Made by a program: the position numbers and the translations under genes
In this document: positions 25,064-62,781 of the stretch, piece by piece
Numbering within the stretch: position 1 is the stretch's first letter
How the letters are laid out: every line of letters begins with the position of its first letter
Assembly: GCF_964204865.1 (NCBI RefSeq)
Contig: NC_135250.1
Span: forward strand, 10,912,001 to 10,976,000
Direction of reading: 5' to 3'
From: Styela clava
Taxonomy: Eukaryota
DNA: 64,000 nucleotides
Notes under the pieces: model-generated
Database searches by the model: none
The model's input: the letters and a program-made list of their open reading frames with translations, nothing else
Told to the model about the DNA's origin: nothing

Positions 25064-26097
25064 ATGAAGTGGTTAAGCGTTCTTGAGGCCGTTAGCATAT
25101 TGGTCACAGTGTCAGATGCATTTCTATGTGGAGGGACATGTGAAGGACGTGTGACTCCATGTCCAGAGCCGAAGTGTGAAAAGGGGGTTGGGCTCGTGAA
25201 ACACGTTTGTGGGTGAGAATTATTTATTATCATTTTAAAACGCAAGTTTTTTCTTTCGATTAAATTTAGACAAATTCATTTTGTTGTACATAATATATTT
25301 TTTAGGTGGTATTTAGGTGTACGGACAGTGTTCGCCAGCGCCAGTGTCTGAAGACCTCTCAAGTATTTCGCATAAAACTAATATTGAATCACGAAAAGCA
25401 AGCATTTTGCAGCTCACAGTTTAAAATTCTGAGGTCTGATTCAACATAAATTCAGCTTTACAATTTTTTAACATCAACTGCGTTGTGATAGCTGTAGGAT
25501 CAAAATCAACCAAGCCTTCAGATTTATCCATCTGAAATATATACTTGTACAGATGCTGCGATGTTTGCTCAAAGCAGAAAGGTGAATCCTGTAATGGAAG
25601 ATGGGGGAGAGATGGAAAATGTGATCCGACAAAAAATTTGATTTGCGTTCCGAAAGAGCCAATTTGTCCCAAAGAAAACATCGATAAAGAACTTCCCAAA
25701 TATTTCTTTGGTGTGTGCATTCCAAAGCGCGACTATGTAAGTTCAATTTCTACTATCTATGCACTTTATCTCAAAGATATGCAGTTGAGTGAGTGAATTC
25801 ACTAGTGGTACATGACTGAGAACCTCCTTGTGGCATCTGAAGTCCTGCAATTGCATAACTATCAAAGAATGTGAATTTTTCTACAACCGTTTATGCTTCA
25901 CAAACTACTTTATCTTTTATTTATTTCATCATATCATACTCGAATTAGACGAAAAATAATTGTTAAATGAAATTAATTTTTGCATTGTAGCATTGTCAGA
26001 AAAACAGTAATTTCAATTTCAAACCACCTTTTTATTATTACAGAAAATTATTCGACAATACTGTAAAAACAACCGCACTCTTGTTTGTCCAGCATAA
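25064..26097 (+). CDS. Secreted single IGFBP N-terminal (IB) domain protein (3 exons, ~128 aa)
   Basis: Exons 25064-25212, 25553-25736, 26044-26097. Signal peptide MKWLSVLEAVSILVTVSDA. The IB-domain signature VCG|CCDVC is assembled across intron 1, followed by GESC..GKC..LIC..GVC. Exon 3 (KIIRQYCKNNRTLVCPA*) is less certain. Confidence 0.82.
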
Positions 26098-29170: not shown

Positions 29171-32100
29171 ATGAATCAAATTTATGAGCTCGAAGGAAAC
29201 GAGACATATGAAACTGCAATTCGATATGAGAATCAACCAGGTCAGATTGTGAGAAGATTTTTTTTTATTAATATTGATGAGTATTACGTATACGTTGAAT
29301 TTTATCATTTTTTAGATCCACGGTCATTTTCTATCCAGACGAATAGGTTGAAAGATATTATCATTACTCAGGAGGTTAAAACAAAAAAGAAGGATAAAAC
29401 GAGCATTCATCATGTTGCTGTTGGTGTGGGATTTGTAATATTAATAGGATTGCTTGTTGCTATTATTGTACAAATGAACCTTCATATGCAGGTATTGTAC
29501 ATTGTTTTTGTACTTTCATGAAATATTTTTCATGAAAAATTATAGCTGAAGAAATTAAGGATCTGAAACAAATGAAATTTCATAAACAGATGAATAATAT
29601 GAATATATAAGAGAGTTTAAGAGTTTTAGTTAGACAAAATCTATAGACATATTCATTTTCAGAAAATAGAATAGACCTTATAATCATTCAAAACCCATCC
29701 ATCCTACGCGCAAAAATAAAAGTGGCATAAACCTAACAATTTTAACATTAGCTCTTATGGGGAATGTGATCACCAGGGCAGAAATTTGCATTTTTTATAA
29801 TTTTCTGGTTACCTTTCGTTGTAAACGTGGGCAGTTTTATATATAGAGTGATTTTAGATATTCTTCGAAATATTTATGACGATAAACATGGTCAAGTTTT
29901 TTGATAATCGTGCATTAAAATTGTAATAGACGTGGTTTTTACGCTGGCGTCTCCCTTCCTAGACCATGACATTCTGCCAACCTGTGAAATATTGGGCTAA
30001 CTGTGGCGCTAATGTCTCCTTCGGTACTGGAAGCGTTTAACATTGACGTTCTATAATCTAGATTCTATACCCGTTCACTTGCATTTGTTTACTGGTTTTA
30101 CGCATTTATTTCTGCTAGTAACCATTTACTTGAAGGCATGCTGACGTGTTATTTAAATTGCCGGTACCAATGGGATGAAAACTAAGTTCTACCTGGTATG
30201 TTAGCCAATAGGTATCTCAGGGTAAGTTGTATACAAACGAATATAAATATTCCCAGCCCATTACTCTATTACATTAATTCAGTAACGGTACAGCACCGGT
30301 ATCGTAATGTGATTCCTCAAATGATGAGTAGCGCGACAACTCTTAATTGAAACAGTATCCTAACTAGGTTAAAAAACATGTCAGCATGCCTTCAGAGAAA
30401 GGTCGCTTGCTGTATCGGTAGGATATGCGCAAAGCTAGTAAGGAAAAGTAAATTTGACTGAATACGTGAATGACTACCATTCCAGATAAACTTCACTAAC
30501 TAAAATTAGTATTTCATTAAACGCCAAGCACGGTATGTTTTGGTTCCGGTATTCTGTGATCACTTAATATGAAGCACGAGCAGTTGGAGCGCATATTTCA
30601 CAGACCACAACGTGTTGGCAGAATTTTTTGGTATAGTGAGAGAGACGCCAGCGGAAACACCACGCCCATTAAATTACCAATGAACGATTATCAAAAATTT
30701 CGACCATATTTATCATGATAAGAATATCAAAAAATCTTCCATCCTCAAAACTGCACACGTCTACAATGTTAAAAGAGCTAATGTTAAAATCGTTTTGTTT
30801 ATGCCACTTTTATTTTTCGCGCTTAGGATGGGTTTTGAATAAATACCGTCTATTAAATGCTATTATTGTAAAGGAATTCATTCACTTTCCTCTTTTTACC
30901 AAATCGACATCGATGATTTTTTTCCATCATTGAATTTGAATGTGGTGTCAAACCTACTGCCTCTTTTTTGATTGAAAGCTCAACAATGCACTCTGTGATT
31001 GCGAGATCCAGAACCAATATTTTGCATAATTCTCTCTTGCAAAATTGTAATGAAATCTCCCCAAGTCAAAACATTTTATACCCTTATCTTATGAATAAAT
31101 AATACACTACATATACTAAATTCACTGTAGTCGAAAATTTCTGCAACAACTGCAACAACAGCTTACGTGAGTTTTCCAAGATCTTGCCTCGAGTTGAGAA
31201 ACCAGGGAATAAAATCTGATGGAATTTATAAAATTAAACCAAGCGGACTCCGATCAGAAATACAGGTTGATATTATTATTCATGATGTATTTGAATATTC
31301 CAATTAAATTTGTTCTAAAAGTTCTAATTTTATCTTCAAGGCATTTTGCGATATGTCAACTGACGGTGGAGGATGGACTTTAGTTGCAAGTGTTCACGAG
31401 GATAATATTGAAACAAAATGTGGATCTGATGATTTCTGGTCAAGCTATGTTCCTGAAAATCAACAAGACCACGCAGGTGTAAGCAACTGGGAAAATGAAA
31501 ACGTTTATGGAGACATTAATAAATGTACAACCAGTGATTATAAAAACGTTGCCTATTTTTCGTTAAACGTAAGCCTGTTTTTATATTTTCATAATTACGA
31601 AAAAAAGAAAAGAAACAATCACCATAATTCTATTACACAGTTAATGAGTGAAGCGACTTTTTTTCTGTATTTATTTTTTGTCAACCAATGTATCATATAC
31701 ATCTATGTTCAATATTATCAGTCTTCAGACGTTATGACATGGCACACTCTAGCAGGTTCTCCAGTTTTGTATATGAAAGAAAATTCTACATCACGATACA
31801 GAACAAATAATAACTTCATGGAAAAATACGGTGGGAATCTCAAGATGTTGTTTGACAACCACTATCCATTGAAAATAACTAGTGGTGAGTAAAAAAATTT
31901 ATTGAATCACAAATGCTTTCCATCTTTCATGGTTCCAGAGACATTTTTCATACAACATAAAATGGTTCTGTATACAATTTGACATTACATTGTAGTTTTA
32001 CTGCTTTACTACTATAGAAAAAAGAACGGAAAAATTATTGAACGCTCTGGTGAATAAAGCAAATGAAATGAAAGCAAAAATTTCCAATTGGTATGAATAC

Positions 32101-35100
32101 TCAACCTTATACAAACATGATGAAATAGTGAGTTCAAAGCTGTATGGCCACTATGGAAATCGGGTAATATTTCAATTTCACAGATGTAATACTTATAAAC
32201 ACAGAAGACGCTTATTCTTCTTTCTCATTTTTCAAAATCCAAGTGTCGTTTTCAAAATACAGTAGGAACCAGCCCACGTTTTTGAAAAGTAATGATTATT
32301 ATCTTATTTGAAAAGTAATGATTACTATCTTATGTGAAAAATCATGATTACGGCCAAGTAAGTGTGGTTTGTAAAAGTTTCATCTATACAATCTATCCAC
32401 AAAAACTGTTCGGAAAGCCTTTATCTAATATTTCAATCAATCAGTCAACTATCTAAGATCTAAGTAAACTAATTCTTTACTCAATTTTATTTGCTATTTT
32501 TGTCTGTGTATTAATGGAGATTTCCTATTTAAAAACCTCTACACAGGTTATATTCCCGGTTCACAAGTTGTCAGTAAAAGTTCAAATTCAGTAGACTGAC
32601 AAACAATGTGGAAAGCATTTATGCGTCTTAAATATTGCGACGATTCTCCAAAATATTTAGATGCTGTATTACACGTTACAATACCTTGCTTGACAGAAAT
32701 ACGACATACAACTTTTGGGAAAACCGTCTACTAAAAACTACAAGATCACGAAGAAGTTATTGGACACGTAGTGGACAAAGCGATCGTTTTGTTGTTATGT
32801 TGTTCCTAGTCTTGTTCTTGTTGTTCTTTGACACGTATTGAAGAAATCGCTTTTCCCTTTGATTACTGGACCAATTTTCAGTTGTTAAACATAAAATTTT
32901 TCTCCAAAAGACTATTACTTTTTTTTCGTTATGATGTCATCAAAATTATGTGGCTTTACGTGTCCATATATTTGAGCATAGCTCTCTTGTATATATACAC
33001 TCACCAATCCGTGAATCTCCAGATTAGATTTCAATCAATAAATAAACTAATTTTCACACAATTTCTTTGCATTGCAATATTGTGCTCCAAAACAATCATA
33101 AACGTCGTTTTCGCTTTCCACAAAAGTTTTAAAGTTTCATGATTGCACAAATTGTGCGAACTTTTCTATACTATTACAAATAAATTTCCCTGTTTAAAGG
33201 ACAAATTGCACGCAGTGGAATTTGTACTAATCATGTTTAAAGAATTAATGGCACAATTCGATATAAATATATATTAATTCATTACGTTCAGATTACATTC
33301 GGAAGTAGTTATCAGGAATATTACGGCATTCCTTATCAGCAGAAAGTTCGGCAAGTATCAAGAATATAAATTATTTTTTCGTTCAGTTTATGTTTTTATC
33401 ATACATCATCTGAAATTCTTTGTTTTTATTATTTCAGATTCGTCCGCTCAAACACCTATTTAAACACAAGCAAGACTCAGCCTTTTATCATGGTGTCTGT
33501 GATATCAAACGAAGACAGGAAGAGCTCATACTACTTCACAAGAGTACTTCAAATTTAATATTTCTCGCGCTGATCTGCACTACCATGCTCAATAGTCATT
33601 ACCGTGTATGTGTGTTCTGTTAACAGGCGTACTCAAGTCAAGATAAAGTGACAGTAAAGAGTCAGCTGAAAAACACAATTTCGAGAGGAAATTTTGAAAT
33701 ACAATACAGCGCAGCGCAATTTGTACATCCTTCCGAGGCCACAGTTTGCGAATATCACTTCATTGTGTCTAATATCAGAGTAAGGAAGCAATTTTGATGA
33801 TCACAATCAATTATTTGCTCAATCAGCTAGATCTAGAGTTTATTTAGACAAAAAATATACAAAATCATTAGAATGTATGTTGTTTCTTACCTTTTTGACG
33901 AAAAAGTACTCGATTTAGTATTGTGATGTTGTGTTTTTGTTAATTAACAGGACTGGAAATCGTACAAACCGACATCTATAATCGATAATCATAATATGTA
34001 TCTATCTTCACGATCTATAAAATGTAATGCTGAGGGAAGCCCATCAAACATTGTAATGGGTTATCTAATGCTTACCAGGTAAGTATTGACATAGACACTT
34101 ATATATATATAAGTTATCATGAAATACTATATATAAACATCTGCAACGACCCGTTGTGCTATTCTGTACAAGGAATAATTCATATGCATGACAAGTAAAG
34201 TCATGAACAAGTTTAGGGTCTAAAATTTCCAACATGAAAAAATTGCATGTTCGTATTATAATAAAAAAATTTATTTGCCATTCCTTTTTTATATGGCACT
34301 TTGAGATGGCTGAATCGTACGTTACTTGGACTTCTTTGATTTTTGTATGAAAAATTCATTGTTTGATTAACACAAGTTGATTGAGTGTATTGATTCTTAA
34401 ACATACTGGTTTCGGATAATTTTTAATCGGTCCTCTCCACTGATGATAAATCCAAACTAAAAATGGTCCTCAACATTACTATGTTTAAAGTTCAAGGTTT
34501 TAATCACTGTAATCAGAATAAATTACTAATTTCTATCACATTCAAACAAACTGAAAACTGGATACATTAATATCTTTCTTAGTCCTTAGTAAGTGCAGGC
34601 ATATTTTTTGCATTTGTCCTAATTATTTATATTTTACATGTAGAAAAAATGGATTTAACTTTACAGTTGATCAACTAGATCATGTGACAGATGTAGTTTT
34701 GACGGCGGTTGAATCCGTGAAAGACTTATTCAAAGGTAAGCACGTATTATAAGTAAAATAATATTATTCCATATACATGTTGTGATCCATCCAAGACATA
34801 TTTTATACTCTGTCACATGCGGCTTTCCGTTTAGTACGCCTCCACACTAAATTCTAAAATTGAGTAGATCATAAAATTGACGATTCATGAGAAAAAAATC
34901 AAAAATTTGATGCGTCTTTATGAATTCCTCAATTTTTCATCAAGTAACTCTGATTATGTGACCATCATTATCTTTGCACCCATGTGCATATGCAACCAGT
35001 ACATATAATTTTGCACACACGGACATTTAATCCCAGCGAACGTTACAATTCTTGAACACCAAGAAGGTGCTACCTGGCCCGCCAAAATCTCCGCGCTGGG

Positions 35101-38100
35101 TAACTACCATCCATCGCCAGTTAAGCACTGGTACAAAGTTTCGCGTTACTGCAGAGTGATCCGGATCAACATTGATATATACTTACACTCGGTCATAACA
35201 TTCCCCAATCGCTATTTAACAAAAAATATTTCCCTCACAAAGTTGAACTCTATATGTTCCAAACAATTTAAAAGTTACAGGAAGTATAGCTATTCTGTTT
35301 TTTAAATTATCGGAGTCAGTGGGGCTTATGAATGTCTGACTCATTCAAAATTTTGATTGCGGTACCGGTACCTGACTTAATCCTAATTGTTTCCGGCTAC
35401 CGAATGCAGAAAACGGAAATTTGAAAAACTTTACCCTCGACTAGACTAATTGATTTTAGTTGGAGATTTCGACTTTAAACTACTATAAACTAGACTTGAA
35501 CAATAGACCTTATTCATATTTATTATTATGATAAACATGGTCAAGATTTTTAATAATCGTTCATTGAAATTTTAATGAGCGCGGCGTTTCCGATGACGTC
35601 ATTCTCACTAGACCATGAGATTCTGCCAACGCGCCGTGCTCTGTGGAATATGCGCCCCAACTGCTTGTGATAACAGAATACCGGTACCGGGACCACAACT
35701 GGCGTTCAACGAAAGACCTATTTTGGTTTTTATTGGATGTTATATATTTCATGAATTCCATGTAACTATGTACATTTCTGGTACACATTTCAAAATCCAA
35801 TGGCCTAACTCAGTTCATATGTTGACACCATGTACCTATCTCAAAATTGGTGATGTTCAGGGCTGGATTTAGACCATGAGAGGCCCCTTCATATTTTTGA
35901 GCTCATAATTTCTCTCTAAACAACATCACATTTAATTGCTTAAAATTTGAAAATATGAAAGAATTTAACTTTTCATTCTCCCCATTCATGGGTGTGAATT
36001 TTTAATTAAAAGAATAAAAGTTTACTTGAGGCAGTTTTGCTTTCAATTTCTTTGATCAAACAACCGCTACAGCCATAACATAGAAACTTCCAGCAGAATG
36101 CACATATTAATAATTTCCCCTATTATGATGCAAACGACGCAATAACGCTGTTTACAATGTGGTTGAAACCAGTTGTGTACAGAATTTTCTACTCTGAAAA
36201 GCTTGATATATATATATATATACTTTTCGTAGGGTTTGAACTTGTCAAGTTTTCAAAAGAATTACAATTTTCGAAACCGAATTTCGAGGCTCTAGGTTTC
36301 AGCCTGCCTAGCCTATTAGTAAATCCAGCCCTGGTGATGGTCCCTACAGCAAATTGCTTGCCCCAATCACTCACTCACTCAATATAAATTAACTGTCGTA
36401 CTTGCTAAGTGTCCACTAAGTGAAAATCTAGTGTACAAAAAAAAAAGCAGTGGTTTAATAATGGACTACATTTTTAACCGAATCCAAAAATATTCCGTAA
36501 CTCAGTCAACCCTTCCTCCAAGGAGTTTTTGTTAAATTGTTCAAACATCTTAATTAACTGTTAATCTTGATATCGAACATGGGGGGCAGGGGGTGAGCTG
36601 ACTGTGATGGTCGTATCGCTTCCCAGTCTATACCGAATAACTGTGTGTTTTGTAGTCTATATAATTTTTATTGATTCAATGGTTGTATTCTGGTTGACAA
36701 AATAACTCTGCCTCTCGTATTCAGTCATAATAGGTTGGAGATATTCATCTTTTTTGTATACCGGTACCGTACAACTTATCCTGCCTATTGGCATGATGGC
36801 CAACATTTTTGTTCGTAGGCCTATTTCAGTATTTACTAAATAATTTAGTTTTCACCTCTTGCAGCCTTGGTACGGTACCGGTAGTTTAAATAACACGTCA
36901 GCATGCCTTCAGTAAATGATTGCTAGCTGTACAGGTATAAATGCGTAAAACCAGTAAACAAACGTGATAGAAACGGTATGGGTTATAGATTGTCAATGTT
37001 AAACGCTCCCAGTATCGGTACCGTACCCAAAGCGACATTAGCGCCGCATTTGCAGCGCATATCCCACAGAGCACGGCGCGTTGGCAGAATCTCATGGTCT
37101 AGTACGAATGACGTCATCGGAAACACCGCGCTCATTAAAATTTTAATGAACGATTATTAAAAATCTTGACCATGTTTATCATGATAAAAATATCAAAAAA
37201 AATGTAAAAAATATTCTGTCCTCAAAACTGCTCACGTATACTATGAAAGATATCTAGAAAGTTACAAAAAATGCAAATTTCTGCTCTGGTGATCACATTC
37301 CCCATGAGAGCTAATGTTAAAAAAAAATTTTTTACATCCCTTTCTTTTTTGCGCGTAGAATGGGTTTTTAATGAATAAGGTCTATTCAAAAAGTTGAATC
37401 CCAATTACGGAAGTTTGAAAATACTACTCCGACACCCGAGCACCAACCCGTAGCCTACAGTAAAACGCAATTACTTCCACAGATGTACACAGGATGATAA
37501 ATGGCTAACTTGTATTATTTAAGTAGTTGTTTATAAAATTTATTGCCTTCTTCCTAGTTTCGATATTTTCTAATTTTCAATAATTGGCAGAATTCCCAGG
37601 AAACGATGCTTCAATATCACCAGTTACATTTGACAAAGGAAGCACTGACTTGATTTTTAACATGACTCCACCTAGTATGCGTCCATATGTCGAACCTGGA
37701 TATCTGCAGTTGAGAGCATACAATTTGTCAGGATACCCGAATGCAATCTGCCCAGGAATCAAGTAAGATTTCAAGAACACTGTGTTTGTTATTATCCTCC
37801 TGTTTTATTTGGTAAGAACAACAGACAGGTTGTCGTACAGTTCATGATTTGCGTGTCCGGAAAATTCGGCGCAGGAAATTTCGCTACAGGGGATCTCGCC
37901 GCAAGAAATTTCGCCGCATAGGAAAAATCGCCACAAGAGCATTTCGCTGTAAAACAAGTATTTGTGATAAAAACAGTTAGATTTGTAGGGTTAGGGTATG
38001 CTCTTAAATAACGAATATTTTTAAAATTAGGCGATTTTTCCTATGCGGCGAGATTTTATACGGCGAAATTTCCCGCGGCGAATTTTCGTTGAACCCATAT

Positions 38101-38849
38101 TTTGTATCCTACTATAAGATGTTTTTTTAATAACTTTTAACTTAATGCATCACTTTATTTTGTTTTATATTATAGAAAACGTTGCAAAATTATGCACTGT
38201 TTTTGCTATAGCGAGTAATTTTCTAAATACAAGACATCGTTTTAGTTAGATAAAGTAGATTTTTAAAGTTAATGTGAGTAATTACAAGATGTAAATGAAA
38301 CCTAGTTTTAACTATATTTTTTGAATGTTCGTGATATGTCTAGAGTGACATCTGTTTCACCGGAACACGTTTGCATTGGAGGAATTTCTGCAGATGTCAG
38401 AGAACGTGGAACTTGTGGAGATTTTGCTGGTGGGAAATCATCCGAATTTTTTTTAAACGTATAATCTGTGTGTCTGAATAAATCAACGTCAAGCCCATAC
38501 TAGGTTACCGACTCATTAAATATTATATAGATTTACTGATGAAGCAGACCTAAATAGTTTTTCACCCCGAATAGAAACTACTACCTGGGTAATAGAGTAA
38601 ACTTTTCTATACCTCTTCTATTAAAAGAGGGTCAGGTCAGTAGTTTTAAGTGAAGCAATTTCAATGTAAAAATGCACAGCGATCAAACTTTATGCGACAT
38701 GATTCAAATATAATTCGTTTAATAGCAGTATTTATAATTTTATAGGTTGGTCTGGAAAATCTGATGACAATATTTTACATTCTCGACCAAATGGATATGC
38801 TCATTCAAAGAAGGATATTTCTTCCGTCATTCTCATATTTTATCGCTGA
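29171..38849 (+). CDS. ITLN: Type II transmembrane intelectin-like protein 1 (13 exons, ~554 aa)
   Basis: Exons 29171-29240, 29316-29491, 31131-31265, 31341-31568, 31722-31884, 32018-32163, 33292-33350, 33438-33543, 33951-34078, 34644-34735, 37591-37762, 38344-38429, 38746-38849. Intelectin motifs PRSC, FCDMSTDGGGWTLVASVHE, DYKN, RYRT, GYLQLR..NAICPG, EHVCIGG, CGDF, terminal ILIFYR*. Boundaries of exons 7-9 are less certain. Confidence 0.88.
29672..30852. mobile_element. Long-TIR (foldback-like) non-autonomous DNA element, copy 1 (ITLN-like 1 intron 2)
   Basis: Imperfect inverted arms of several hundred bp: TAGACC..TTCAAAACCCATCC..ATAAAAGTGGCATAAAC vs GTTTATGCCACTTTTAT..GGATGGGTTTTGAA..GTCTA. 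Homologous to 35504-37384 in opposite orientation. Superfamily unresolved. Confidence 0.8.
32281..32350. repeat. 26-bp minisatellite, ~2.7 copies
   Basis: TTTGAAAAGTAATGATTA(T/C)TATCTTA repeated. Confidence 0.75.
35504..37384. mobile_element. Long-TIR (foldback-like) non-autonomous DNA element, copy 2 (ITLN-like 1 intron 10)
   Basis: Termini TAGACCTTATTCAT / ATGAATAAGGTCTA; ~130-bp near-perfect inverted arms, so ORFs 35615+ and 37095- both begin MRFCQRAVLCGICA. Confidence 0.85.
35858..36333. mobile_element. hAT MITE nested in the foldback element
   Basis: TIR CAGGGCTGGATTTA/TAAATCCAGCCCTG; 8-bp TSD GTGATGTT/GTGATGGT (7/8). Confidence 0.88.
37858..38092. repeat. Palindromic element built of ~15-bp AAATTTCGCCGC units
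   Basis: Tandem GAAATTTCGCCGCA units on the left mirrored by GCGGCGAAATTT units on the right; GGGTTAGGG in the spacer. Confidence 0.75.
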
Positions 38850-45818: not shown

Positions 45819-46535
45819 ATTTGTATGTCGAAAACGTTCGTAGTCTTATACATTTTTTACTTTTATTTTAGATTAACCGGCTTTTTATTTCCTTCTGCAT
45901 TATTAAGAAGAATAAAAGAAATATTTTATGATTTAATGTTTTGTCTAAATTTGGATAGTCTGTTAAATTGATATTAAAGATATCCATAAGGTTTTGATAA
46001 AAATGTTCGCAGCCCTAAAATGATTATTATTCGAGTTTTACAGAAAAAAAAACTTTTTAATGATTGGTGACGAATGAGAATAGAAATTGCATAACTTTAA
46101 TCAAGAATATACTTTTTCGTGACGTGATTAGATTCTCCATTGACTGAAAGTAATTGAGGAAATTTAACTGACAACAAGATTAGATCTATCAACCAATCGC
46201 AGGTCTAGGTATTTCTAAAATGAGCAGGTGTACGTACCACACTGCATGTGTGGTAAAATTAGCGCAAAAAAACAAGCACGGTAAAATGCGTATGTTCAAT
46301 ATTTTGGACTCCAAATTACATCAACAATTTGCAATATTTGACAGTTTAGTAATAAGTTTTGCTTTGTAAACACTTTATTGTTTATGGTGCGATTTTTCTT
46401 TCAAATATTCCTATTGACTGGATAAAAACATCACAGTTTGAATCGCACATTGTATTTTGCCTCGTATGCTAATGGAATGTATTATTTATTATTCATTGTA
46501 TGTACTTGTTTGTTTTTCTCTAGTTATAGGTAATA

Positions 46536-49500
46536 ATGAATTATACGAAAGTAGGGCTCACTATAGTTGCTATTCTGGACGTAGTTGTTGTTTTAGTGTT
46601 GTATTATACTACGTTAACAACGGTCAGTGTGTATGATTATACAAAGGATACAAAAGTGGAATTCGATTCATTATATTTTTCAAATGTAACGGAGGAAAAT
46701 CATTCTATTGAACCTAATAATTTATTTAAGACCTCAAAGTTTCTGGGAGATATTAGCAGAAATGCTACAGTTTCAACGCATTCAACACTTCCAATTCCAA
46801 AACAAAAATATGTATTGGACCAATTTATTGGAAACACGAACTATTCTATCATTGGATATAACGGATCAAGAGTATACAATACAAGTAAACACAACAATAA
46901 TACAGGAAAATTTTGCATGGAAAAACCACCTCGTCTAGTTGGAAAAATGGCTATTCCAAATAACATTCTCCCTCCATCGTGGGAGGAAATTCGGAAGCAA
47001 AATTTGAATATACACGGCGGAAGTTATATGCCTGAAAACTGTAAAGCGAGATATAAAATCGCTATAATAATAGCCTTACGAGGCAGAGAGGACCAATTGA
47101 AAATTCTCCTCTATCATTTGCATCCGATTTTACAAAGACAGCAAGTCGATTATACTATATACACTATCACTATGGCCGGAAAAGGCGTTTTCAACAGAGC
47201 TAAACTTATGAATGTGGGATTCGCGGAGGCAAATAGAGGTAAACTATTTTCAGTTTTGCTCTGGGTGAAGATTTACTAAAAAGCATTTAACTTATGACAA
47301 AGTACATCATAATGGTAATGGTCATTTTGTTAATACGCTTTGCCTGTGGTTTTTGGGTACATGTGTTTTCAACGATAAGACCGAAACAACCACAACATTT
47401 GCTGGTAGATAATATATATATATGGTAGGCTGTTACAAATTAGCAATATATACCGGTAGATATCGGGTTTTCAAATTCCGTAACATCGCCAAGAGCATTT
47501 TGCGAATGTGTGGAAAGAACCAGAAAATGTTACATAAATTGACATGCTATGTTCTTTGCCAGTGTTCATTTGGTCAGTAATTCTCGTTTTTTATTAAGAC
47601 CGAAAATACGATTGCTATATATTCCATGACGTGGATTTACTATTGGAAGACGATAATTGTTTATATTGGTGTTCGAAAGAGCCAAGAGAACTCGCTCCCT
47701 ACATGGATAAATTTGGGTATAAACCCTTGTCTTACTCACTCGGTTGCCGTTCAAGTAATGGTGAGTAGCATAGCTTTTCAGCATAAACTTTAATTATAGG
47801 GATATTCTGCTTAAGAAGAGGTAATTACCAAAAATTACCAGTTCATATTATTGTTCTATTTTATTGTGTCTATACAATAATAATTTAGAGATTAATCTTA
47901 TTCACGGCATTGGTTGACCCGATACTGATTTTTGGAATTTTAATCGCGAGTTCCAGTTTAAATCAGTAGTTTGAAAATCTAGAAAATAAGTGGTAATATA
48001 TTTGTGGTTGTTTTTGGCACATTTTGAGCTTTTTTAAAGTACCGAATACCGAATTCTTTTTACCGAATTGTTTAATATTTCAAATTCAAGATATGGTAAA
48101 CGCGCATAGTCTGAAGTTACTAATCTAATAAATCCAGTCCATTTTTCGTTTTTTTTTAATCTTTCATATATAACATAAAACGAATCAAGCTTTTGTGAGA
48201 TAGCCATGGTCCTTCAGACGGTATTGTCATTTTAAAGTTAGCTCTGTCTATTCCGGGCAAATGCATGAATATTTCTTGTCTTTTTGGACAGGACCTATGT
48301 GTACCTATCGATCGTTTTATCATTAGTATCTTGTTGTTGGTATGTCGTGAAAAATCACTTTTCTCTTTACTAGACCAATTGCTTTAAAATTTTCAGTCGA
48401 TAAATTGTTTGCTGTATGATTCTGTTCATTATTTTTGTCGCTACAAGGCTATTACTTTTATCTATTTTAAAAAAATCTGTGGATTCTATGGGATTCGTTT
48501 TTCGTGTGTCATCATCAAAATCAAAAATTGCGCACCTTGTGGTAATTCTGCGTTCTCGTTCTTTGTGATTTGGTTGTCAGTCCAAGTCGGGAAGAATACG
48601 GTACCGTACGTGTCATGTCTATATATTTAAGCATTACTTCCGTGTTTCTTTTGTTTTGATTTTATCGTGCCTATTTCCCTGGCAAACAATTTAATTTGAT
48701 CTACCTATAGTATCGACAAAATTACCGTCACTTTCAGAAGAAAACGCACATGAGTTGTACTGTAGGATGTTGTGTAAAACCCTCCGGAGTTTATGGGGAT
48801 TAATTCCATTCATTGACGTCTAAAAATTACAATGATCCCTTTTTGCCCAATTATAGTTGTCATTCCGGGATAGGAGATACCTTCATAGGTGCCATTTCAA
48901 AATATTTACTCATTTAAAACAATATATTGCAATTTAGACTAACGATCATTTTAGAAAAATTGTCTCCATAAACTAATAGATTTCTAGAGCACTGATACAT
49001 ACAACTGTGAAAGCGATTGAATTTCTGTATTAGAGTAATTTTGAAGCCGTTTGTTTCATTCCAGCGCCACGGATAAACAAGTACTTTGGCGGAGTCGTTC
49101 AGGTTTCGCACGAACTTTTCCTTGAAGTGAATGGTTTTTCTAACATATTTTGGGGTTGGGGAGGTGAGGATGATGATATGTATTCAAGATTGTGGAGTAA
49201 AGGTAAGGACGTGGACTCAGTTTTATTTCATTTTAGTGTATTTTGAATGGATTTGCAAAACTTGAAAAATATTTGGATCTGAGAAAAATATCTGAAACTA
49301 TGAGAATAAGTCAAAAGTCGAAATGATCCCATACATACAAGATGCAATACAAGTAGGATACTGCAAAAAAATAACTTTTATATAGCTAACTCAATATACA
49401 TATACAGCCAATGTACTATGCATATATGTGGTAACTAATTATCTTATCCCAGGATGATTGGCAAGAGTTCGATAAACTCGTGAACCGACTGTGACTCGTA

Positions 49501-55659: not shown

Positions 55660-58600
55660 ATGAATGAAGCGTACGAGCTTGAATACAACGACACATATGA
55701 AACTGCAATCCGTTACGAGAATCAACGAGGTAAGACCCCATTAAATTTTATTTGTTCTTTTAGGCAAGATTGTAAGTTTGACCTTCAAACGTCGGTTTCT
55801 GGTTTCAACCTATGCAGGCTACATGTGAGTTCACAAAACGCACGACAGGGCCAAATATTGCACGACAATGTTTAGTTGTTCAGTTTAATGAGGGATTGTT
55901 ATTGCGCAGAGTTTCCGAATATGATTGACATGTTCTCATTTTACGATATCATCAAAACAAATTAACCAACATGAATAGCTTGATTGATAATAACACATTT
56001 GTGTGGCTTCTGTTTAGAGCGAAATTATTGTTCTTAGCATTTCGGAAATTCGTATAATACTTAGAGGGTTCAAGCTTACACCGTGGGATTTTTCAGGTCC
56101 AGTGAGAGCGAGACCTATTCAGACAAGTTCTATAGATCCCCAAAAAGAAATTCCTGTTAAAACTGAAAACAAAAACGTGAAAACTACCAACCTCTATGTC
56201 TCTGTTTGTATTGGATTTGCACTGCTGGCCGGAATGCTTATTGTTGTCATCGTACAGCAAAATAAACATTACCAGGTATTGCACATTATATTTTGCATAT
56301 ATATATCATATCACGTTGCCAATTGCAATTAACCTTGTGTCTGTGAATCATTTCCTCCTATTATGAAAGAAAATATCACTCAACCAATTGAAGTATTGTA
56401 TAATATTATACATCAACCCGATTTTAAACTTATGTAAAACATTTTATATTTTCACAACATTTATTCTAATTCAATCCAGGAAAGCGGTCTTAAAACTACT
56501 ACTACTGTTCAGCAAACAACAGCTCCTAGCAGCAGATTTGCTAGATCTTGTCTTGACTTAAAAAACCAAGGAATCCAAGTAGATGGAATTTTCACAATCA
56601 AACCGGATAACAATTCAGAAATACAGGTTGAAATTGTTCACGAAATTTGTTTTTGATTAGTCGAAATGGTTGAAATTAAATTGTGATTAAGGTATACTTT
56701 TCTCGAATACAATAGCCTTATTTTGCAGGCATATTGCGATATGTCAACTGACGGTGGAGGATGGACTTTAGTAGCAAGTGTTCACGAGGATGATATTGAA
56801 ACAAAATGTGGATCTGATGATTTCTGGTCAAGCTATGTTCCTGAAAACCAACAAGCTCACGCAGGTGTGAGCAACTGGGAAAATGAAAACGTTTTTGGGG
56901 AGATAAATAAATGTACAAGCAGTGATTATAAAAACTCGGCTTACTTTTCGCTTAATGTAAGTTTATTTTTCATAAAACGAGGTCCACACTATATGATACA
57001 CTATATAGATATTTCATATATTGAATTAGATTCACAATAACCTCTAGTGGGCGTGGCGTAACAATTTTCGACGTCATAGTTACGTAATAAGGTCCGCCAA
57101 AATATACTCGTCCAAAACGCTCAAACGTTCACCCGAAATCGAGCAAGCTCTCGTTACATCGTCGCAACGTGATCGTAGCGATTGGTTAGTCATTAGTCAG
57201 GGTCACCAACCTTTTCGAGGCCGAGGGCTACTTTTTGGGTGCAGATTGAGCTGCGGGCTACCAGTTCAATGTACACTTCTGAAAAAGTCAGTTGCCCGAT
57301 TAAGCTTCAATTATTGGTATAATTACTGGTATTTAGTGAAGTAGAGACACTAATAAGCTTTAGGATTCTTCAGGGAATCAAACGATTATCACAACGTAGC
57401 AGATACATTTTTATCAATGACGCTTGCATTTCTAAACTGAGTGTTTTCAAATTGATTTTCAACACTCTGCGCAAGTTTAAGATGAAATGTACTTAACAGT
57501 TATACTATCAAATGTTGCAGAGTATCATACTCCGACGTGTAACTTGACACTGTAACTCTGAGCAAGTCTTGCAGATTTTCATCAGTGAGACGTGTTCCGT
57601 GTTTGTTCCTGGTGGAATGAGTCGCGGCGCTGTGGCCCATCGTGTAAAGCGATAGGTTCGCAGGTTAGAATTCCATGCGGGGATAGTTATGTACTAAAGG
57701 ATTGTTGGACTCCTCGACGCCGTAGGGTGGTTCACATAACCGCTGGCCGATTACGGCTTCATTCGCCATCAAGTCCATGCATCCGCAAACAAATAACTAA
57801 CTAATCTCATACCCGACATGGACTGGTAACTGGGCGAGAGGCCGTGGTCGTCATATGGTTGAGTCGTCTTATCGGCTATCTTCTCCCCCGGGATAAATAT
57901 GTAAATCTTCTCCTATCCTGAGTTTATGTCAAAAATGTTGATTCACAAAGATAGGTTGAACCAAACGATGGTCTCGTAAAATAGGATTGCTGTATGATTT
58001 GAATCGCGAGCTTTTTCTGCCCGTACTGCGCTGTCCAGTGGATAGATTGCGTGACAAGATGTGAAATATCTCTTCGCTTTGCCGTCGCTACGATCGCTCC
58101 AGTAATGAGACACACGCAGGCTTTTTTCATGGTGGTAAAAATGATTTCATTGTGAAAATGATGAGTTTTTCATCGCTTTTCTGCCATTTTACTTTGGAAT
58201 CAATAATTGTATTATTGCTGCTCCACAAACCAACGGACAAGAAAAAGTGCGGGTTCGTGGAAAGTGATATCGGTGTGATGTCATAATTGGAAGAGCGTAA
58301 ATTGACCCGTCACATTACTGAGGTCAAACAAAAATAAGGTTGATGGTTACAAATATTAATATAGTGTCATTTCCAGTTCCCATATGTGATTTATACTAAA
58401 ATAGCAGGACAAAATTTAATTGATCTAGCTTACTTATAAGAGCCGTTATTAAGCTTAGTTTGGAACAGACCGGCGGGCGACTCATATGATCTTCGCGGGC
58501 GACTTGGTGCCCGCGGGCAACGCGTTGGTGACCCCTGCATTAGTGAGTTCGTTATCGCTGGCGCAGATGCCACTTTGGACGATCTGGCTGTACTTTGGCA

Positions 58601-61600
58601 GGATATATGACGCAGAAAACGTTGCGTACCGATAGAGCATTTTAGCCTATTTTATCACAGCTATTTCTAGACAATTTTTGATTACTGCCATTAAACTACA
58701 ACTCCTAAGAAGGCAAGAGGATGATTGACTTATTTGATTCATACTCAAATTTCGGAATCTTGACCGAAAACTAACGAATAGCATTCAAAATCGCGAAAGC
58801 TAGGTATTGTTTGAAACCACAACCAAAAATTTGTCCGAGTGACAAAAGTGCCTGAGCGGATGCTTAAGGGTTCATTGTTACGTCACTTTTTGCATCTTGC
58901 TGATTGGCCAATGTCACGAAATGAACAAGGTAGTCGATGCTCAGTGAAACATCCCTTGGAAAACAATTCGCCATTTTTTCGTGTTATTGCGGGCCTTAGC
59001 GCATCATCCTCTGCCGTTTTTGGCTGCCGGTGAAAACTGAAACAACAATAAAAGTGGTCACCGGTAAAGCCATAATTTGTATATACAGAAGTAATATGTT
59101 AATAATCATACATATAGCTTATTTCTGAACAACAGTATGCAGGTAAACAATATCTGGATGATATTCTTAGGCTTCGGACGTTATGATGTGGCAAACTCTG
59201 GAAGGATCGTCCGTTGCGCATATGAAAGAAAATTCCACTTTAAGATACAGAACAAACAATAAGTTCATGACAAACTACGGAGGAAATCTAAAATATCTAT
59301 ATGAAAATCATTTACCATTGAAAATTACTTCAGGTGGGGAAAATATATTCATTACACAGGTTTTATTAATTACAATTTTTAATTATAACTTGAGAGCGTA
59401 AGTGGAATGACTTATATTTTGCAGATCAATTTTCTGTTTCACTTTTTATATACAATCTAAATAAATAGACATTATGATACTTTAGAAAAGAGAACAGCAA
59501 AATTGCTAGATGCTTTGGTGAATAAAGCTGATGAAATGAAGTCGAAAATTCCTGATTGGTATGAATACACGTACTCCAACACGTACCAAATATCAAACTC
59601 AATGCTGTACAACTCATATGGAAATCTGGTGATATTATATTCACTGCATTCTACAATCGGTTTATAAATCGTTTGTAAAATAATAATACTTCATTGAACT
59701 TCTTAGTCATTTTAAATAGTCTGGGTATTCGAATATATTTGAGTGCTATATGTAGTGTGAATATTTTTTAACAATACAAAACAGCTCAAATGGGAACAAT
59801 AATTAAATCTGGAATTTGTGTAAATTGTCCAGGTGATTCAAATAGTAAACCTTATATGTCATAAAACTGAATTTGGACAAAGAGTTTAACAAACGAGAAC
59901 CTATCGAAGACTTCAAAATTCCAAACTGATAGATATCTACTGAAATGACTTGTGGCTTTTTACCGATAACACATAAAAAAATCGTGTGCTCCAATGGGTC
60001 GAATACAAACTCAATAAAAAAAAAGGCCAATGTTTCAAATCGGTAGCAATAATAGCATAACATTTTTAGTGGCATGAAATAAAAATTGGGACACATTATT
60101 GATAAAACATATAAGAAAATTACAGAAAGGTATGGAAATATTTAGGGTAAGGACGTATTTATATCTTGGCAAACATATTGTTTCCTAATTATCGGTAAAC
60201 TCAAAACAAAACAAAAAAGTTTCCTCAGTAGCTAATGTTTTTATGGGCAGCACAATCTGTAACTGCGTGGACATTTTTGATAGTGAAATAAAACTCGTTT
60301 CATTTCTTTTCTAAATTAGTGCAGCAAACTCTTTAGGCAAGATCAATATTTTATTTTCATAGATAACATTCGCAAGTTCGTACAGATCACAAGGCAACCT
60401 GTTTTATCAAAAGAAATATCGGTAAGTGTCAAACGCTAAGTTAAAGTTACATTTATTTTACAAAAAGTGAACCTGTAAATCGTTTTACTAAATGGTTGTT
60501 GTTCGCTTTTCTTTGCAGCTAATGGGCCTATCGATTTCAACTTGAAGTATCGAAAAAAAGTTAAAGCTGCTAAAAGATTATTACCTTTGCTTTATTGACC
60601 CTACATTTCATCCTAACTATTATGTTTTAATTTATGAAAACGCTCTTCATAAAATAGGGGTACATGCTTTCGTCACGCTTGTCTACTAATCTCTCTATCA
60701 ATAAGCTCATTTAAGTATAAACACCTATATATGTATTATTCGCTGATTATTTGGTTTCTGCGAGACTAACTACTTATGCTTCTTCTATGCTTTTGTGCCG
60801 GTGGATCCGTATGCATATATTGCAGGGATGCTGCAGCAAGAGTAGAAATAACAATCCTATAAGTGATTCAAGAGTCTTGCTGCAGACTAACACAACAATA
60901 TTTCTGTAACGTTTCGTTTGACCAATGTCAGACTTCTTCAGACATACATAGTTCAACTCTAACATGAAAAGCAGTTACATGTATCTTTGGACAATCAGTG
61001 TAAAATTATTTAACATGCGTGACTCCCATAATTTTACACTCATTGTTCAAATATGCATGTAACTGCTTTTCATGTTAGAGTTGAACTATGTATGTCTGAG
61101 GAAGTCTGACCTTGGTCAGAATACTATTACAGATACAGATATTACAGAATACAGATTACTATCGGGCGGAATTTTTTGGACATCAGTATAGTATAGTATT
61201 GAACAATTTGTACACGTCTTTGTTTACTAAAAATAAGTGAACGGCAAAAAGTGGAGATCAAGTTTATCGAACTACCGAAACATCAATTGATATTTCTATG
61301 ACGGAATATATTTTATGTGCAATGTTATACGAAAACAAATATATGGTTCGCTATACTGTACAGTGTACACTATCTTTACCAAAGAAAAATACTTACTAGC
61401 GCTTATTCTTGTTCACAAGCCGCGGACGTGTATTTATTTTATTCCAGTTCAAAATTGTTCTGATCATCACATTCATGTGCAAATCTGTTTATATAAATAA
61501 TTGCAAAAAGAAAGACCCACCTCTATATTTTGGTACGCCTCGTAAATATGTTAAACTGTTAACTGACCGTATTCCTTGTTCAGAGTGAAATATATTTCTC

Positions 61601-62781
61601 CTGAATACGTGTGCATTGGAGGAGTATCTGGAGATGTCAGAAATTATGGTACTTGTGGAGATTTTGCTGGTAAGAAAGTCATGCTTGAGTATATTTCAAT
61701 GTATTGCGTGATCTTTTGAATTCAAATTGGATGATGAAAAATTACCTTTAAATCTAACTGGGCAAAGTTGAATATTGGACACGAAGTCGACCTATGATTG
61801 GCTTCGGAAAATGTTCCTTCTGTTGGGTTTGATTTTTTTGGGGGGGAATATCGATCAACTACGAACTCAGTCGCTAGGCTATTACTTACTATCTCAATCA
61901 TCATTTATTTATCTCAAATTAATTCGATGAATTTTATGGACCCAATATTTCACCCTAAATCTATTTTGCTTTGCGTATATTACGCCACCACTGCGCTATG
62001 CCCGCGATCCGCATTTGTCAAAATTTGTAGAATTTAAGCAGACGAATGCAATATAATGCATGCTGACAAACAAAAATATTGGATTGAAAAATAAAGACAG
62101 TTACTTAAGCAATTTCGTCGTCAAAGCTAACAAGAGAGCAATTTTTTCACAATAACAACAAGAAGAACAACAAAAATACAAAGGAGAATATTAACAACAA
62201 GAACAATTTAACAAAACGAATCGTCTGTCCACTTTGCTTCCAATGATTGCTGATGCGTTTTAACCTCGGATGCAAAATTAAATCGGTACATCTTGAAATA
62301 CAGCTTATTTCACTGGACACGATATATAAAGTGTAGCTATGGATTGTTTTTCTGAATTCTCATTGTTATTGTGAAAATACTCTTATTCTCAATTAATGGA
62401 GCGATCGATCTCAAATAAACGATAGTCACTGTTCCTTTGTGTTCATATATTTGACCACTGCTCTCCCTTTTTAACCATATTTTCTCAAACTTCAATACAG
62501 AAATTGAATAGAAATATATTGTTAATGAGGCAAAAAACCGATGCGCCAAACTGGAAAGACCAAGCTTATTTCGCAACTTTGTGGCTACGCCTGGCGGCTG
62601 TTTATGCAGGGATGGGTTAGTTTTCTTGTTCGGTAAAAAAATAACATTTAAAGTTTGAAATAAACTATTTTTTGTAGGTTGGTCTGGGAAATCCGGTGAC
62701 ACGATTCAGCCATCGATACCATATGGATATGCACATTCCAGAAAAGATATATCCTCTGTTATCCTGATATTTTATCGCTGA
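55660..62781 (+). CDS. ITLN: Type II transmembrane intelectin-like protein 2 (9 exons found, ~392 aa; lacks equivalents of exons 8-11 of paralogue 1)
   Basis: Exons 55660-55729, 56097-56275, 56480-56626, 56729-56956, 59171-59333, 59486-59628, 60363-60421, 61584-61669, 62678-62781. Each matches a paralogue-1 exon in phase, and six match exactly in length (70, 228, 163, 59, 86, 104 nt). Ends ILIFYR*. Confidence 0.82.
57198..58537. mobile_element. Non-autonomous hAT (Charlie-like) transposon in ITLN-like 2 intron 4
   Basis: TIR CAGGGTCACCAAC/GTTGGTGACCCCTG; CATTAGT duplicated on both sides; GCGGGCGAC/GCGGGCTAC subterminal repeats. Confidence 0.88.
57626..57919 (+). mobile_element. tRNA-derived SINE-like element nested in the hAT element
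   Basis: GC-rich ~295 bp; A-box-like TGGCCCATCGTGTAAAGCG, B-box-like GGTTAGAATTCC, and a simple-repeat tail ATCTTCTCCTATCCT. Confidence 0.55.
60903..61133. repeat. ~105-bp-arm inverted repeat with Penelope-like terminal motif
   Basis: Left arm 60903-61009 vs right arm 61028-61133; includes a perfect AGACATACATAGTTCAACTCTAACATGAAAAGCAGTTACATG match. Confidence 0.88.
60904..60947 (-). ncRNA. Candidate minimal hammerhead ribozyme motif
   Basis: Minus strand reads UGU-CUGAAGA-A-GUCUGAC-AUUG-GUCAAAC-GAAA-CG-U-U-ACA: core boxes, stem II and a 3-bp stem I. Confidence 0.4.

What the first reader, a model, noticed from the sequence alone, without database searches (positions are those of the whole stretch)
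29171..29491. Intelectins rebuilt as type II membrane receptors with a conserved tri-tyrosine cytoplasmic tail
Seen in sequence: neither intelectin-like gene has an N-terminal signal peptide. Both start with a 70-nt exon encoding YELExNxTYETAIRYENQ, almost invariant between paralogues while the next exon is divergent, then a basic patch, a ~20-aa TM helix (VAVGVGFVILIGLLVAIIV / VSVCIGFALLAGMLIVVIV) and a Thr-rich stalk. Established: characterised chordate intelectins are secreted microbial-glycan lectins; acidic-context Tyr motifs and YxN are kinase and SH2 (Grb2-type) docking sites; FIBCD1 is a type II fibrinogen-domain receptor but not an intelectin. Inference: a signalling or endocytic pattern-recognition receptor built on the intelectin fold.
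Basis: partly seen in the sequence, partly recalled or inferred. Interest (0 to 1): 0.85.

Follow-up and report, generated by a model that had tools for sequence, protein, structure and literature searches.

The report
Membrane-anchored sea-squirt intelectins, tyrosine tail
Two neighbouring genes of the sea squirt Styela clava encode intelectin-type sugar-binding proteins that are predicted to be anchored in the cell membrane rather than secreted; their short inner tail carries a strongly conserved tyrosine motif shared by at least eleven genes of this genome, so they look like cell-surface receptors, although no function has been tested.

Summary
Both + strand intelectin-like genes in the window (gene A 29171-38849, gene B 55660-62781) start with a 70-nt exon encoding an acidic tyrosine motif. 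A second exon encodes a basic patch and one hydrophobic helix. A short Thr-rich stalk and the lectin exons follow, and there is no signal peptide. Gene B, spliced at GT-AG sites, reproduces RefSeq XP_077971262.1 (Styela clava) exactly.

The tail motif evolves under stronger constraint (dN/dS 0.08) than the lectin domain (0.20). Genome-wide, YExx[IVM]RYEN occurs 12 times against 0 for the control. Eleven of these are homologous first exons upstream of intelectin exons, in four clusters. Type II intelectin-like models also exist in Ciona, Phallusia and Clavelina.

Signalling is inference. The conserved core is a two-tyrosine motif ending in YxN, not three tyrosines, and ITAM, ITIM, hemITAM, NPxY and YxxΦ motifs are not enriched. 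The genes also carry a ~228-aa insert inside the intelectin fold, and gene B has lost five exons.

The sequences are already public as unnamed predictions. I found no paper describing this architecture. It is a new variant of a known kind.

The parts
29171..29240 (+). Gene A exon 1: start codon plus the acidic tyrosine tail motif (residues 5-22 = 29183-29236); GT donor in phase 1
29241..29315 (+). Gene A intron 1, 75 nt, GT..AG with a T-rich tract; stop-free and a multiple of 3, so retention would stay in frame
29316..29491 (+). Gene A exon 2: divergent linker, basic patch (29378-29398), predicted signal-anchor helix (29414-29470)
31131..31265 (+). Gene A exon 3: short Thr-rich stalk and start of the fibrinogen-like part of the lectin domain
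31341..31568 (+). Gene A exon 4: intelectin signature exon (GGGWT)
31722..31884 (+). Gene A exon 5: intelectin domain, last exon before the insert
32018..34735 (+). Gene A exons 6-11 (32018-32163, 33292-33350 with GC donor, 33438-33543, 33627-33779, 33951-34078, 34644-34735): ~228-aa insert inside the intelectin fold
37591..37762 (+). Gene A exon 12: intelectin domain resumes
38344..38429 (+). Gene A exon 13: region homologous to the ligand and calcium site of ITLN1
38746..38849 (+). Gene A exon 14 with stop codon (38847-38849); the 14-exon model gives 605 aa
55660..55729 (+). Gene B exon 1: same 70-nt tail exon (motif 55672-55725)
56097..56275 (+). Gene B exon 2: linker and predicted signal-anchor helix (56198-56254)
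56480..62781 (+). Gene B exons 3-9 (56480-56626, 56729-56956, 59171-59333, 59486-59628, 60363-60421, 61584-61669, 62678-62781). Spliced together with exons 1-2 they reproduce XP_077971262.1 (392 aa) exactly. The counterparts of gene A exons 8-12 are missing.

Best explanation
Genes A and B belong to an ascidian family of intelectin-like (X-type) lectins that have no cleavable signal peptide. They are inserted in the membrane as type II proteins. About 55 residues at the N-terminus face the cytosol, one signal-anchor helix spans the membrane, and a short O-glycosylatable stalk carries the lectin domain, itself split by an extra ~228-aa beta-rich domain, outside the cell.

The first exon is a conserved cytosolic module: an acidic stretch with two tyrosines six residues apart, the second in a YxN context. 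The most likely working is that ligand binding clusters the receptor (intelectins are oligomers), the tail tyrosines are phosphorylated, and the YxN site recruits a Grb2-type SH2 adaptor, leading to signalling and/or uptake.

Shown here: gene structure, topology features, purifying selection on the motif, and its genome-wide linkage to intelectin genes. Inferred: membrane insertion without cleavage, phosphorylation, the adaptor, the ligand and the cellular outcome.
For: - The exon models close the frame with canonical sites. Gene A has 14 exons and 605 aa. Gene B spliced equals RefSeq XP_077971262.1 residue for residue.
- There is no signal peptide and no alternative signal-peptide exon, so the helix is the only ER-targeting element for a Cys-rich, sequon-rich lectin domain.
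- Positive-inside rule across 21 family proteins: 80 K+R on the N side against 28 on the C side.
- The AF2 model of P0176 shows residues 1-54 unstructured, helix 55-80, and 80-102 unstructured.
- The motif has dN/dS 0.08 at dS about 1, against 0.20 for the lectin domain. The constraint is therefore on the protein, not the DNA.
- The pattern for YExx[IVM]RYEN gives 12 hits in 377 Mb against 0 for the control. Eleven are ATG-initiated exons of 67-73 nt with a phase-1 GT donor two or three codons after the motif. They lie 1-3.5 kb upstream, on the same strand, of intelectin exon hits. At least nine of the 11 have a basic-flank hydrophobic exon within 0.7 kb downstream.
- Y-x5-Y-x-N occurs in 10 of 22 family tails against 0.17 expected from shuffles.
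- Membrane-type relatives exist in Ciona, Phallusia and Clavelina.
- The helix label clusters on the lectin-domain tree, apart from the canonical secreted intelectins.
- SH2-domain exons are present in the genome, at least 38 matches.
- Established knowledge: pYxN is the Grb2 SH2 consensus.
Against: - No RNA evidence could be obtained. The RefSeq and UniProt entries are predictions.
- The motif fits none of ITAM, hemITAM, ITIM, NPxY or YxxΦ, and YxxΦ tends to be under-represented. YxN is only a three-residue consensus.
- The first tyrosine is absent in 4 of 11 first exons.
- One Styela paralogue (P0151) has Phe in place of the second tyrosine. Clavelina tails and some Ciona and Styela tails lack the motif. 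The membrane anchor is therefore more general than the motif.
- Gene B lacks 217 codons, including a core part of the lectin fold.
- Only some ITLN1 ligand-site positions are visibly retained.
- Shedding of the ectodomain is not excluded.
Confidence: 0.55

Rival explanations
1. The proteins are type II membrane lectins, but the conserved tail is a trafficking or retention signal (endocytosis, polarised sorting, or residence in an intracellular compartment) read without phosphorylation. It is not a signalling site.
For: - The architecture of short tail, signal anchor and stalk is shared with many endocytic and Golgi type II proteins (established knowledge).
- FIBCD1, the nearest analogue in topology, is endocytic (own knowledge).
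- The tail is short, and predicted unstructured in P0176.
- Acidic clusters next to tyrosines are common in sorting signals.
Against: - None of the canonical tyrosine sorting motifs is enriched: YxxΦ in 5 of 22 tails against 8.3 expected, and NPxY in 0.
- No dileucine motif is seen in exon 1.
- Invariance of both tyrosines together with the Asn at +2 fits an SH2-type reader better.
Confidence: 0.22
2. The membrane anchor is only a route to secretion. The helix acts as a signal anchor that is cleaved, or the ectodomain is shed, so the working form is a soluble lectin as in other chordates. On this view the tail has a minor or biosynthetic role.
For: - All characterised intelectins act as soluble lectins (papers cited).
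- Gene B and P0176 have an RxxR just before the first lectin cysteine.
Against: - The RxxR is not conserved in gene A or P0002.
- A 55-residue hydrophilic segment ahead of the helix, and the lack of small residues after it, argue against signal-peptidase cleavage (inference).
- A dispensable tail would not show dN/dS 0.08 or be kept in 11 paralogues with identical exon design.
Confidence: 0.13
3. Gene-model artefact: exons 1-2 belong to another transcript or are not expressed, and the lectin exons are transcribed from a different start.
For:
- All database entries are computational predictions.
Against: - Phases match across all junctions and the frames close.
- No alternative signal-peptide exon exists, and gene B's intron 2 is only 204 nt.
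- The same exon 1 - exon 2 - lectin order recurs in 11 genes in four clusters and in three other ascidian genera.
- Exon 1 shows protein-level purifying selection.
Confidence: 0.07

Closest known systems
Secreted chordate intelectins (human ITLN1/omentin, Xenopus XEEL/XCGL, lamprey serum lectin; PDB 4WMQ, 4WMO, 7E1E)
   Same: Same lectin fold and signature. P0176 matches them at E about 1e-43 in two stretches, and Foldseek's top six hits have TM about 0.65 on the target. The fibrinogen-like N-terminal segment reaches the Pfam PF00147 cut-off over about 50 residues only, as is usual for intelectins.
   Different: The known proteins have a cleavable signal peptide and are soluble oligomers. The genes here have a cytosolic tail, a signal anchor and a stalk, and the fold is interrupted by a ~228-aa beta-rich domain. 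Ligand-site residues are only partly recognisable.
FIBCD1 (type II membrane receptor with a fibrinogen-related domain; PDB 4M7F)
   Same: Same overall logic: an N-terminal cytoplasmic tail, a signal anchor, and a fibrinogen-superfamily lectin domain outside the cell.
   Different: It is not the same family. Similarity to FIBCD1 is E 4.5e-7 over 50 residues, against 1e-43 for intelectins. The tails are unrelated, and FIBCD1 has a coiled-coil stalk and no insert (own knowledge).
Type II C-type lectin receptors with hemITAM or ITIM tails (Dectin-1/CLEC7A, CLEC-2, CLEC9A, DCIR)
   Same: A lectin ectodomain on a type II anchor with an acidic tyrosine motif near the N-terminus. This is the model for how such a tail can turn glycan binding into signalling.
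   Different: A different lectin fold. The defining YxxL/I is absent here, and the conserved site is YxN instead.
Predicted ascidian proteins already in public databases (for example XP_077971262.1, XP_039265291.1 and LOC120340930 of Styela clava; LOC100185179 of Ciona; CAB3262707.1 of Phallusia)
   Same: These are the same genes or their paralogues and orthologues. Gene B is identical to XP_077971262.1.
   Different: They are named only 'intelectin-1-like' or 'uncharacterized protein'. No description of the membrane topology or the tail motif was found in the literature I could search.

Membership tests
Intelectin / X-type lectin family | Fibrinogen-like N-terminal segment with the GGGWT signature | tested here: met
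   Present in exon 4 of both genes. PF00147 matches over about 50 residues above its cut-off for P0001 and P0176.
Intelectin / X-type lectin family | Sequence and fold similarity over the whole intelectin domain to solved intelectins | tested here: met
   P0176 (71% identical to gene A) against ITLN1/XEEL: E about 1e-43, in two stretches (95-260 and 497-610) separated by the insert. Foldseek TM on target is about 0.65. Gene B lacks part of the second stretch.
Intelectin / X-type lectin family | Calcium-dependent ligand site (Asn/Glu/His/Glu plus a Trp/Tyr box of human ITLN1, recalled from memory) | tested here: inconclusive
   In the alignment and in exon 13 of gene A, the Glu and His positions are retained in gene A and the Asn position is Ser. 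The alignment is too gapped to place the second Glu, the Trp or the Tyr.
Intelectin / X-type lectin family | Cleavable N-terminal signal peptide and soluble product (a property of all characterised members) | tested here: not met
   The N-terminus is acidic and hydrophilic, and the only hydrophobic segment is at residues 57-75. No alternative signal-peptide exon was found.
Type II (signal-anchor) single-pass membrane proteins | No signal peptide; one internal hydrophobic helix of about 20 residues | tested here: met
   Kyte-Doolittle 3.15 (gene A) and 2.9 (gene B) over 19 residues. The AF2 model has a helix at 55-80 in P0176.
Type II (signal-anchor) single-pass membrane proteins | Positive-inside charge bias on the N-terminal flank; luminal features (Cys, N-glycan sequons) all C-terminal | tested here: met
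   K+R is 5 against 1 in gene A, and 80 against 28 summed over 21 family proteins. Gene A has 9 Cys and 6 sequons after the helix and 0 Cys in the tail.
Type II (signal-anchor) single-pass membrane proteins | Experimentally shown topology and lack of cleavage | not testable with these tools
   Needs protease protection or epitope accessibility assays.
ITAM / hemITAM / ITIM immunoreceptor tails | YxxL/I (single with an acidic lead, paired at 6-12 residues, or preceded by S/I/V/L at -2) | tested here: not met
   ITAM is in 0 of 22 tails, hemITAM-like in 0 of 22, and ITIM in 1 of 22 (expected 1.65). None is in gene A or P0176.
Grb2-type SH2 docking site | Tyr with Asn at +2 (YxN), conserved | tested here: met
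   YEN is invariant in the 11 first exons (by construction of the pattern). Relaxed members have YKN or YQN. YxN is in 13 of 22 tails against 4.9 expected.
Grb2-type SH2 docking site | Phosphorylation of the tyrosine and binding of an SH2 adaptor | not testable with these tools
   Only the presence of SH2-domain exons in the genome was checked.
Tyrosine-based endocytic signals | YxxΦ or NPxY in the cytosolic tail | tested here: not met
   No YxxΦ in gene A or P0176. It occurs in 5 of 22 tails against 8.3 expected. NPxY is in 0 of 22.
FIBCD1 | Full-length fibrinogen-related domain of the FIBCD1/ficolin type | tested here: not met
   Only 50 residues align (E 4.5e-7), while intelectins align over the whole domain.

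The most novel reading that the evidence does not exclude
Ascidians, the sister group of vertebrates, independently built a multigene family of signalling pattern-recognition receptors on the intelectin fold. The family has at least 11 genes in Styela clava, with relatives in Ciona and Phallusia. Each member has a type II anchor, an added beta-sandwich domain inside the lectin, and a previously undescribed cytosolic two-tyrosine module (YExxΦRYEN). That module would couple glycan recognition to Grb2-type adaptors, a functional counterpart of Dectin-1-type receptors that uses neither a C-type lectin nor an ITAM.
Probability: 0.3. Interest if true: 0.75.

Novelty: new variant of a known kind. 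Interest (0 to 1): 0.6.

Why it matters
Intelectins are treated as soluble microbe-binding lectins throughout the chordates. A conserved, expanded, membrane-anchored branch with its own cytosolic tyrosine module would matter for two reasons:
- It would show that the fold was also used for cell-surface receptors in the closest invertebrate relatives of vertebrates.
- It would add a candidate link between glycan recognition and intracellular signalling in animals that rely on innate immunity.

It also gives simple tests: topology, tyrosine phosphorylation, SH2 pull-down and a glycan array. Finally, existing annotations ('intelectin-1-like', 'uncharacterized') hide the topology, the tail module and the internal insert.

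Tried and rejected
- I redid it from the locus files.
- **Tail searches.** A word-based search with the exon 1 - intron 1 - exon 2 reading gave nothing; its length window excludes full-length proteins. Tail-region searches with P0001 and P0152 found only Styela clava intelectin-like proteins. Pfam finds nothing in the tail.
- **First gene A model.** My first model, with exon 5 joined directly to exon 12 (377 aa, in frame), was rejected as the main form. Homologues showed six conserved exons in between. An exon-skipped isoform is not excluded.
- **Known tail motifs.** I considered ITAM, hemITAM, ITIM, NPxY and YxxΦ readings of the tail and rejected them on counts.
- **Sulfation and glycosylation of the tail.** Tyrosine sulfation or N-glycosylation of the tail (it holds a conserved NxT in genes A, B and P0002) would need the N-terminus in the lumen and the Cys-rich lectin in the cytosol. 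I rejected this as implausible.
- **Literature.** Five searches found no description of membrane-type intelectins. Yan et al. 2013, Hayashibe et al. 2017 and Chen et al. 2020 are not held, so prior mention there cannot be excluded.
- **Joined model.** The spliced gene A model was never sent to a search tool. Searches used single exons or stop-free stretches by reference, or public protein ids. The joined model was built only inside local scripts, from window coordinates.
Full report
**What is at the coordinates.** The window is AT-rich eukaryotic DNA with no N. At 29171 an ATG opens a 70-nt exon ending in a GT donor at 29241. After a 75-nt intron, a 176-nt exon (29316-29491) follows. The first exon encodes 23 acidic residues with three tyrosines. 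The second encodes a divergent linker, a Lys-rich patch and a 19-residue hydrophobic segment. A second copy of both exons lies at 55660-55729 and 56097-56275.

**Gene models.** I mapped the exons by eye and then with homologues.
- Gene A has 14 exons (29171-38849) and encodes 605 aa. All junctions are AG/GT except one GC donor, at 33351.
- Gene B has 9 exons (55660-62781). Spliced, it reproduces protein P0001 exactly (exon-internal identity 100%).
- P0001 is RefSeq XP_077971262.1, 'intelectin-1-like [Styela clava]'.
- An older annotation holds a 610-aa version (P0176, 71% identical to gene A) with every exon.
- Gene B in this assembly lacks the counterparts of gene A exons 8-12. That is 651 nt, or 217 codons, and the deletion is in frame.

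**It is an intelectin, with an insert.** P0176 matches human intelectin-1 and Xenopus XEEL at E about 1e-43. The match falls in two stretches separated by about 236 residues. FIBCD1, angiopoietins and ficolins match only the first 50 residues, at E about 1e-7. An AlphaFold2 model (mean pLDDT 65.8) gives these regions:
- residues 1-54 unstructured;
- a helix at 55-80;
- an unstructured stalk at 80-102;
- a lectin part of moderate to low confidence;
- a confident beta-rich insert, with pLDDT 84-97 for most of it.

Foldseek's top hits are intelectins. The insert is the subject of other notes of this scan and I did not pursue it.

**Type II topology.**
- There is no N-terminal hydrophobic segment. 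The single helix lies at residues 57-75 in gene A and 58-76 in gene B.
- In gene A the 15 residues before the helix hold 5 Lys/Arg and the 15 after hold 1. Over 21 family proteins the sums are 80 and 28.
- All 9 cysteines and 6 N-glycan sequons of gene A follow the helix, and the tail has no cysteine.
- No ATG-initiated hydrophobic exon able to splice in phase to exon 3 or 4 exists in introns 2 or 3 of either gene. Gene B's intron 2 is only 204 nt.

The helix is therefore the only element that could take the disulfide-rich lectin into the ER. That implies an N-in, C-out orientation. Lack of cleavage is inferred, not shown.

**The tail is under selection and is a family hallmark.** Nei-Gojobori counts between genes A and B:

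| Region | Codons or identity | dN/dS or dN |
|---|---|---|
| Tail motif | 18 codons, 16 identical residues, dS about 1 | dN/dS 0.08 |
| Lectin exons | 159 codons | dN/dS 0.20 |
| Linker, helix, stalk | - | dN 0.4-1.0 |

The synonymous changes show that the constraint acts on the peptide, not the DNA.

A degenerate DNA pattern for YExx[IVM]RYEN has 12 matches in the 377-Mb genome, against 0 for the reversed control. Eleven of the 12 share one design: an ATG, an acidic stretch, the motif, two or three more codons, then a GT donor in phase 1. These exons are 67-73 nt long. All eleven lie 1-3.5 kb upstream, on the same strand, of intelectin signature exons found independently. They sit in four clusters: this window, C1 at 27.36-27.41 Mb, C14 at 16.69-16.73 Mb, and C17 at 8.58-8.62 Mb. 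At least nine of the 11 have a hydrophobic exon with a basic N-flank within 0.7 kb downstream. The twelfth hit has no Met or donor and is probably chance.

The first tyrosine is present in only 7 of the 11 exons. The conserved core is therefore two tyrosines six residues apart, the second followed by x-Asn.

**Beyond Styela.** A library-wide HMMER search with exon 4-5 returned many proteins with an internal helix ahead of the lectin domain. They come from Styela clava, Ciona intestinalis, Phallusia mammillata and Clavelina lepadiformis. To my knowledge the Phallusia entries derive from mRNA, but I did not verify that.
- Their tails are 23-110 residues long, mostly acidic and Tyr-bearing.
- One Ciona protein (P0023) has the same Y-x5-Y-x-N spacing.
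- The Clavelina tails and some others lack the motif.

On a quick maximum-likelihood tree of the N-terminal lectin part, gene A sits in a Styela-only clade with SH-aLRT 99. Eleven of its 13 rows have the internal helix. The helix label needs 8 changes on the tree, against 21 when shuffled. These clades lie apart from vertebrate, amphioxus and canonical ascidian secreted intelectins, but the deep branches are not resolved. Isoforms and near-duplicates were left out of that tree, as listed in the script.

**How it most likely works.** The shown facts fit a cell-surface lectin whose short cytosolic tail is read by a partner that recognises tyrosines.
- ITAM, hemITAM and NPxY are absent. ITIM and YxxΦ are not enriched.
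- The only known consensus that fits is pYxN, the Grb2-type SH2 site (established knowledge).
- SH2-domain exons are present in the genome.

I therefore favour phosphotyrosine-dependent adaptor docking after ligand-driven clustering, at moderate confidence. The rivals are a phosphorylation-independent sorting signal, shedding to a soluble lectin, and a gene-model artefact; each is given with odds.

**What is known.** The sequences are public as unnamed predictions. In the papers I could search, ascidian intelectins appear only as soluble glycan-binding or marker genes. No paper describes membrane-type intelectins. Three key subscription papers could not be read.

**Limits.**
- The spliced gene A model was used only in local scripts and was never sent to a search tool.

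**Verdict.** The type II architecture is well supported by sequence logic. The signalling role is plausible but untested. This is a new variant of a known kind, of moderate to good interest.

Noticed in passing
window 32018-34735 (gene A exons 6-11): A ~228-aa insert splits the intelectin fold. In the AF2 model of the homologue P0176 it is a confident beta-rich domain (pLDDT 84-97). After the intelectins, Foldseek hits the N-terminal beta-supersandwich domains of GH65, GH63, GH92 and GH95 enzymes (E 4e-5 to 2e-3). Skipping exons 6-11 would keep the frame.
   Followed up: partly
window 60422-61583 (gene B): Gene B lacks the counterparts of gene A exons 8-12 (651 nt, 217 codons, in frame). An older Styela clava annotation (P0176) has them. 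This may be a recent or polymorphic deletion, or an assembly feature.
   Followed up: partly
window 33351-33352: Exon 7 of gene A uses a GC donor (G|GCAAGT). Gene B has a GT at the same place.
   Followed up: yes
window 29241-29315 and 31569-31721: Introns 1 (75 nt) and 4 (153 nt) of gene A are stop-free and multiples of three, so intron retention would give in-frame insertions.
   Followed up: no
window ~46530-49250 (+): A gene resembling a beta-1,4-galactosyltransferase lies between the two intelectin paralogues. I recognised it only from open reading frames, by eye.
   Followed up: no
window 25536-25793 (+): A Cys-rich open frame resembles an IGFBP N-terminal-type domain. Judged by eye only.
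   Followed up: no
window 30560-30715 (+), 35553-35705 (-), 36927-37157 (+): Copies of a repeated element with a similar open frame lie inside introns 2 and 11 of gene A. It is probably a transposable-element relic.
   Followed up: no
G000 C1:27.36-27.41 Mb, C14:16.69-16.73 Mb, C17:8.58-8.62 Mb (loci L037-L046): Three further clusters of membrane-type intelectin genes have the same first-exon design. C14 holds two first exons with identical peptides (L041, L042).
   Followed up: partly
P0030 (Branchiostoma floridae XP_035698623.1): An amphioxus intelectin-like protein has a hydrophobic segment at residues 14-32 followed by a coiled-coil-like stretch. It is either a long signal peptide or an independent signal anchor.
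   Followed up: no
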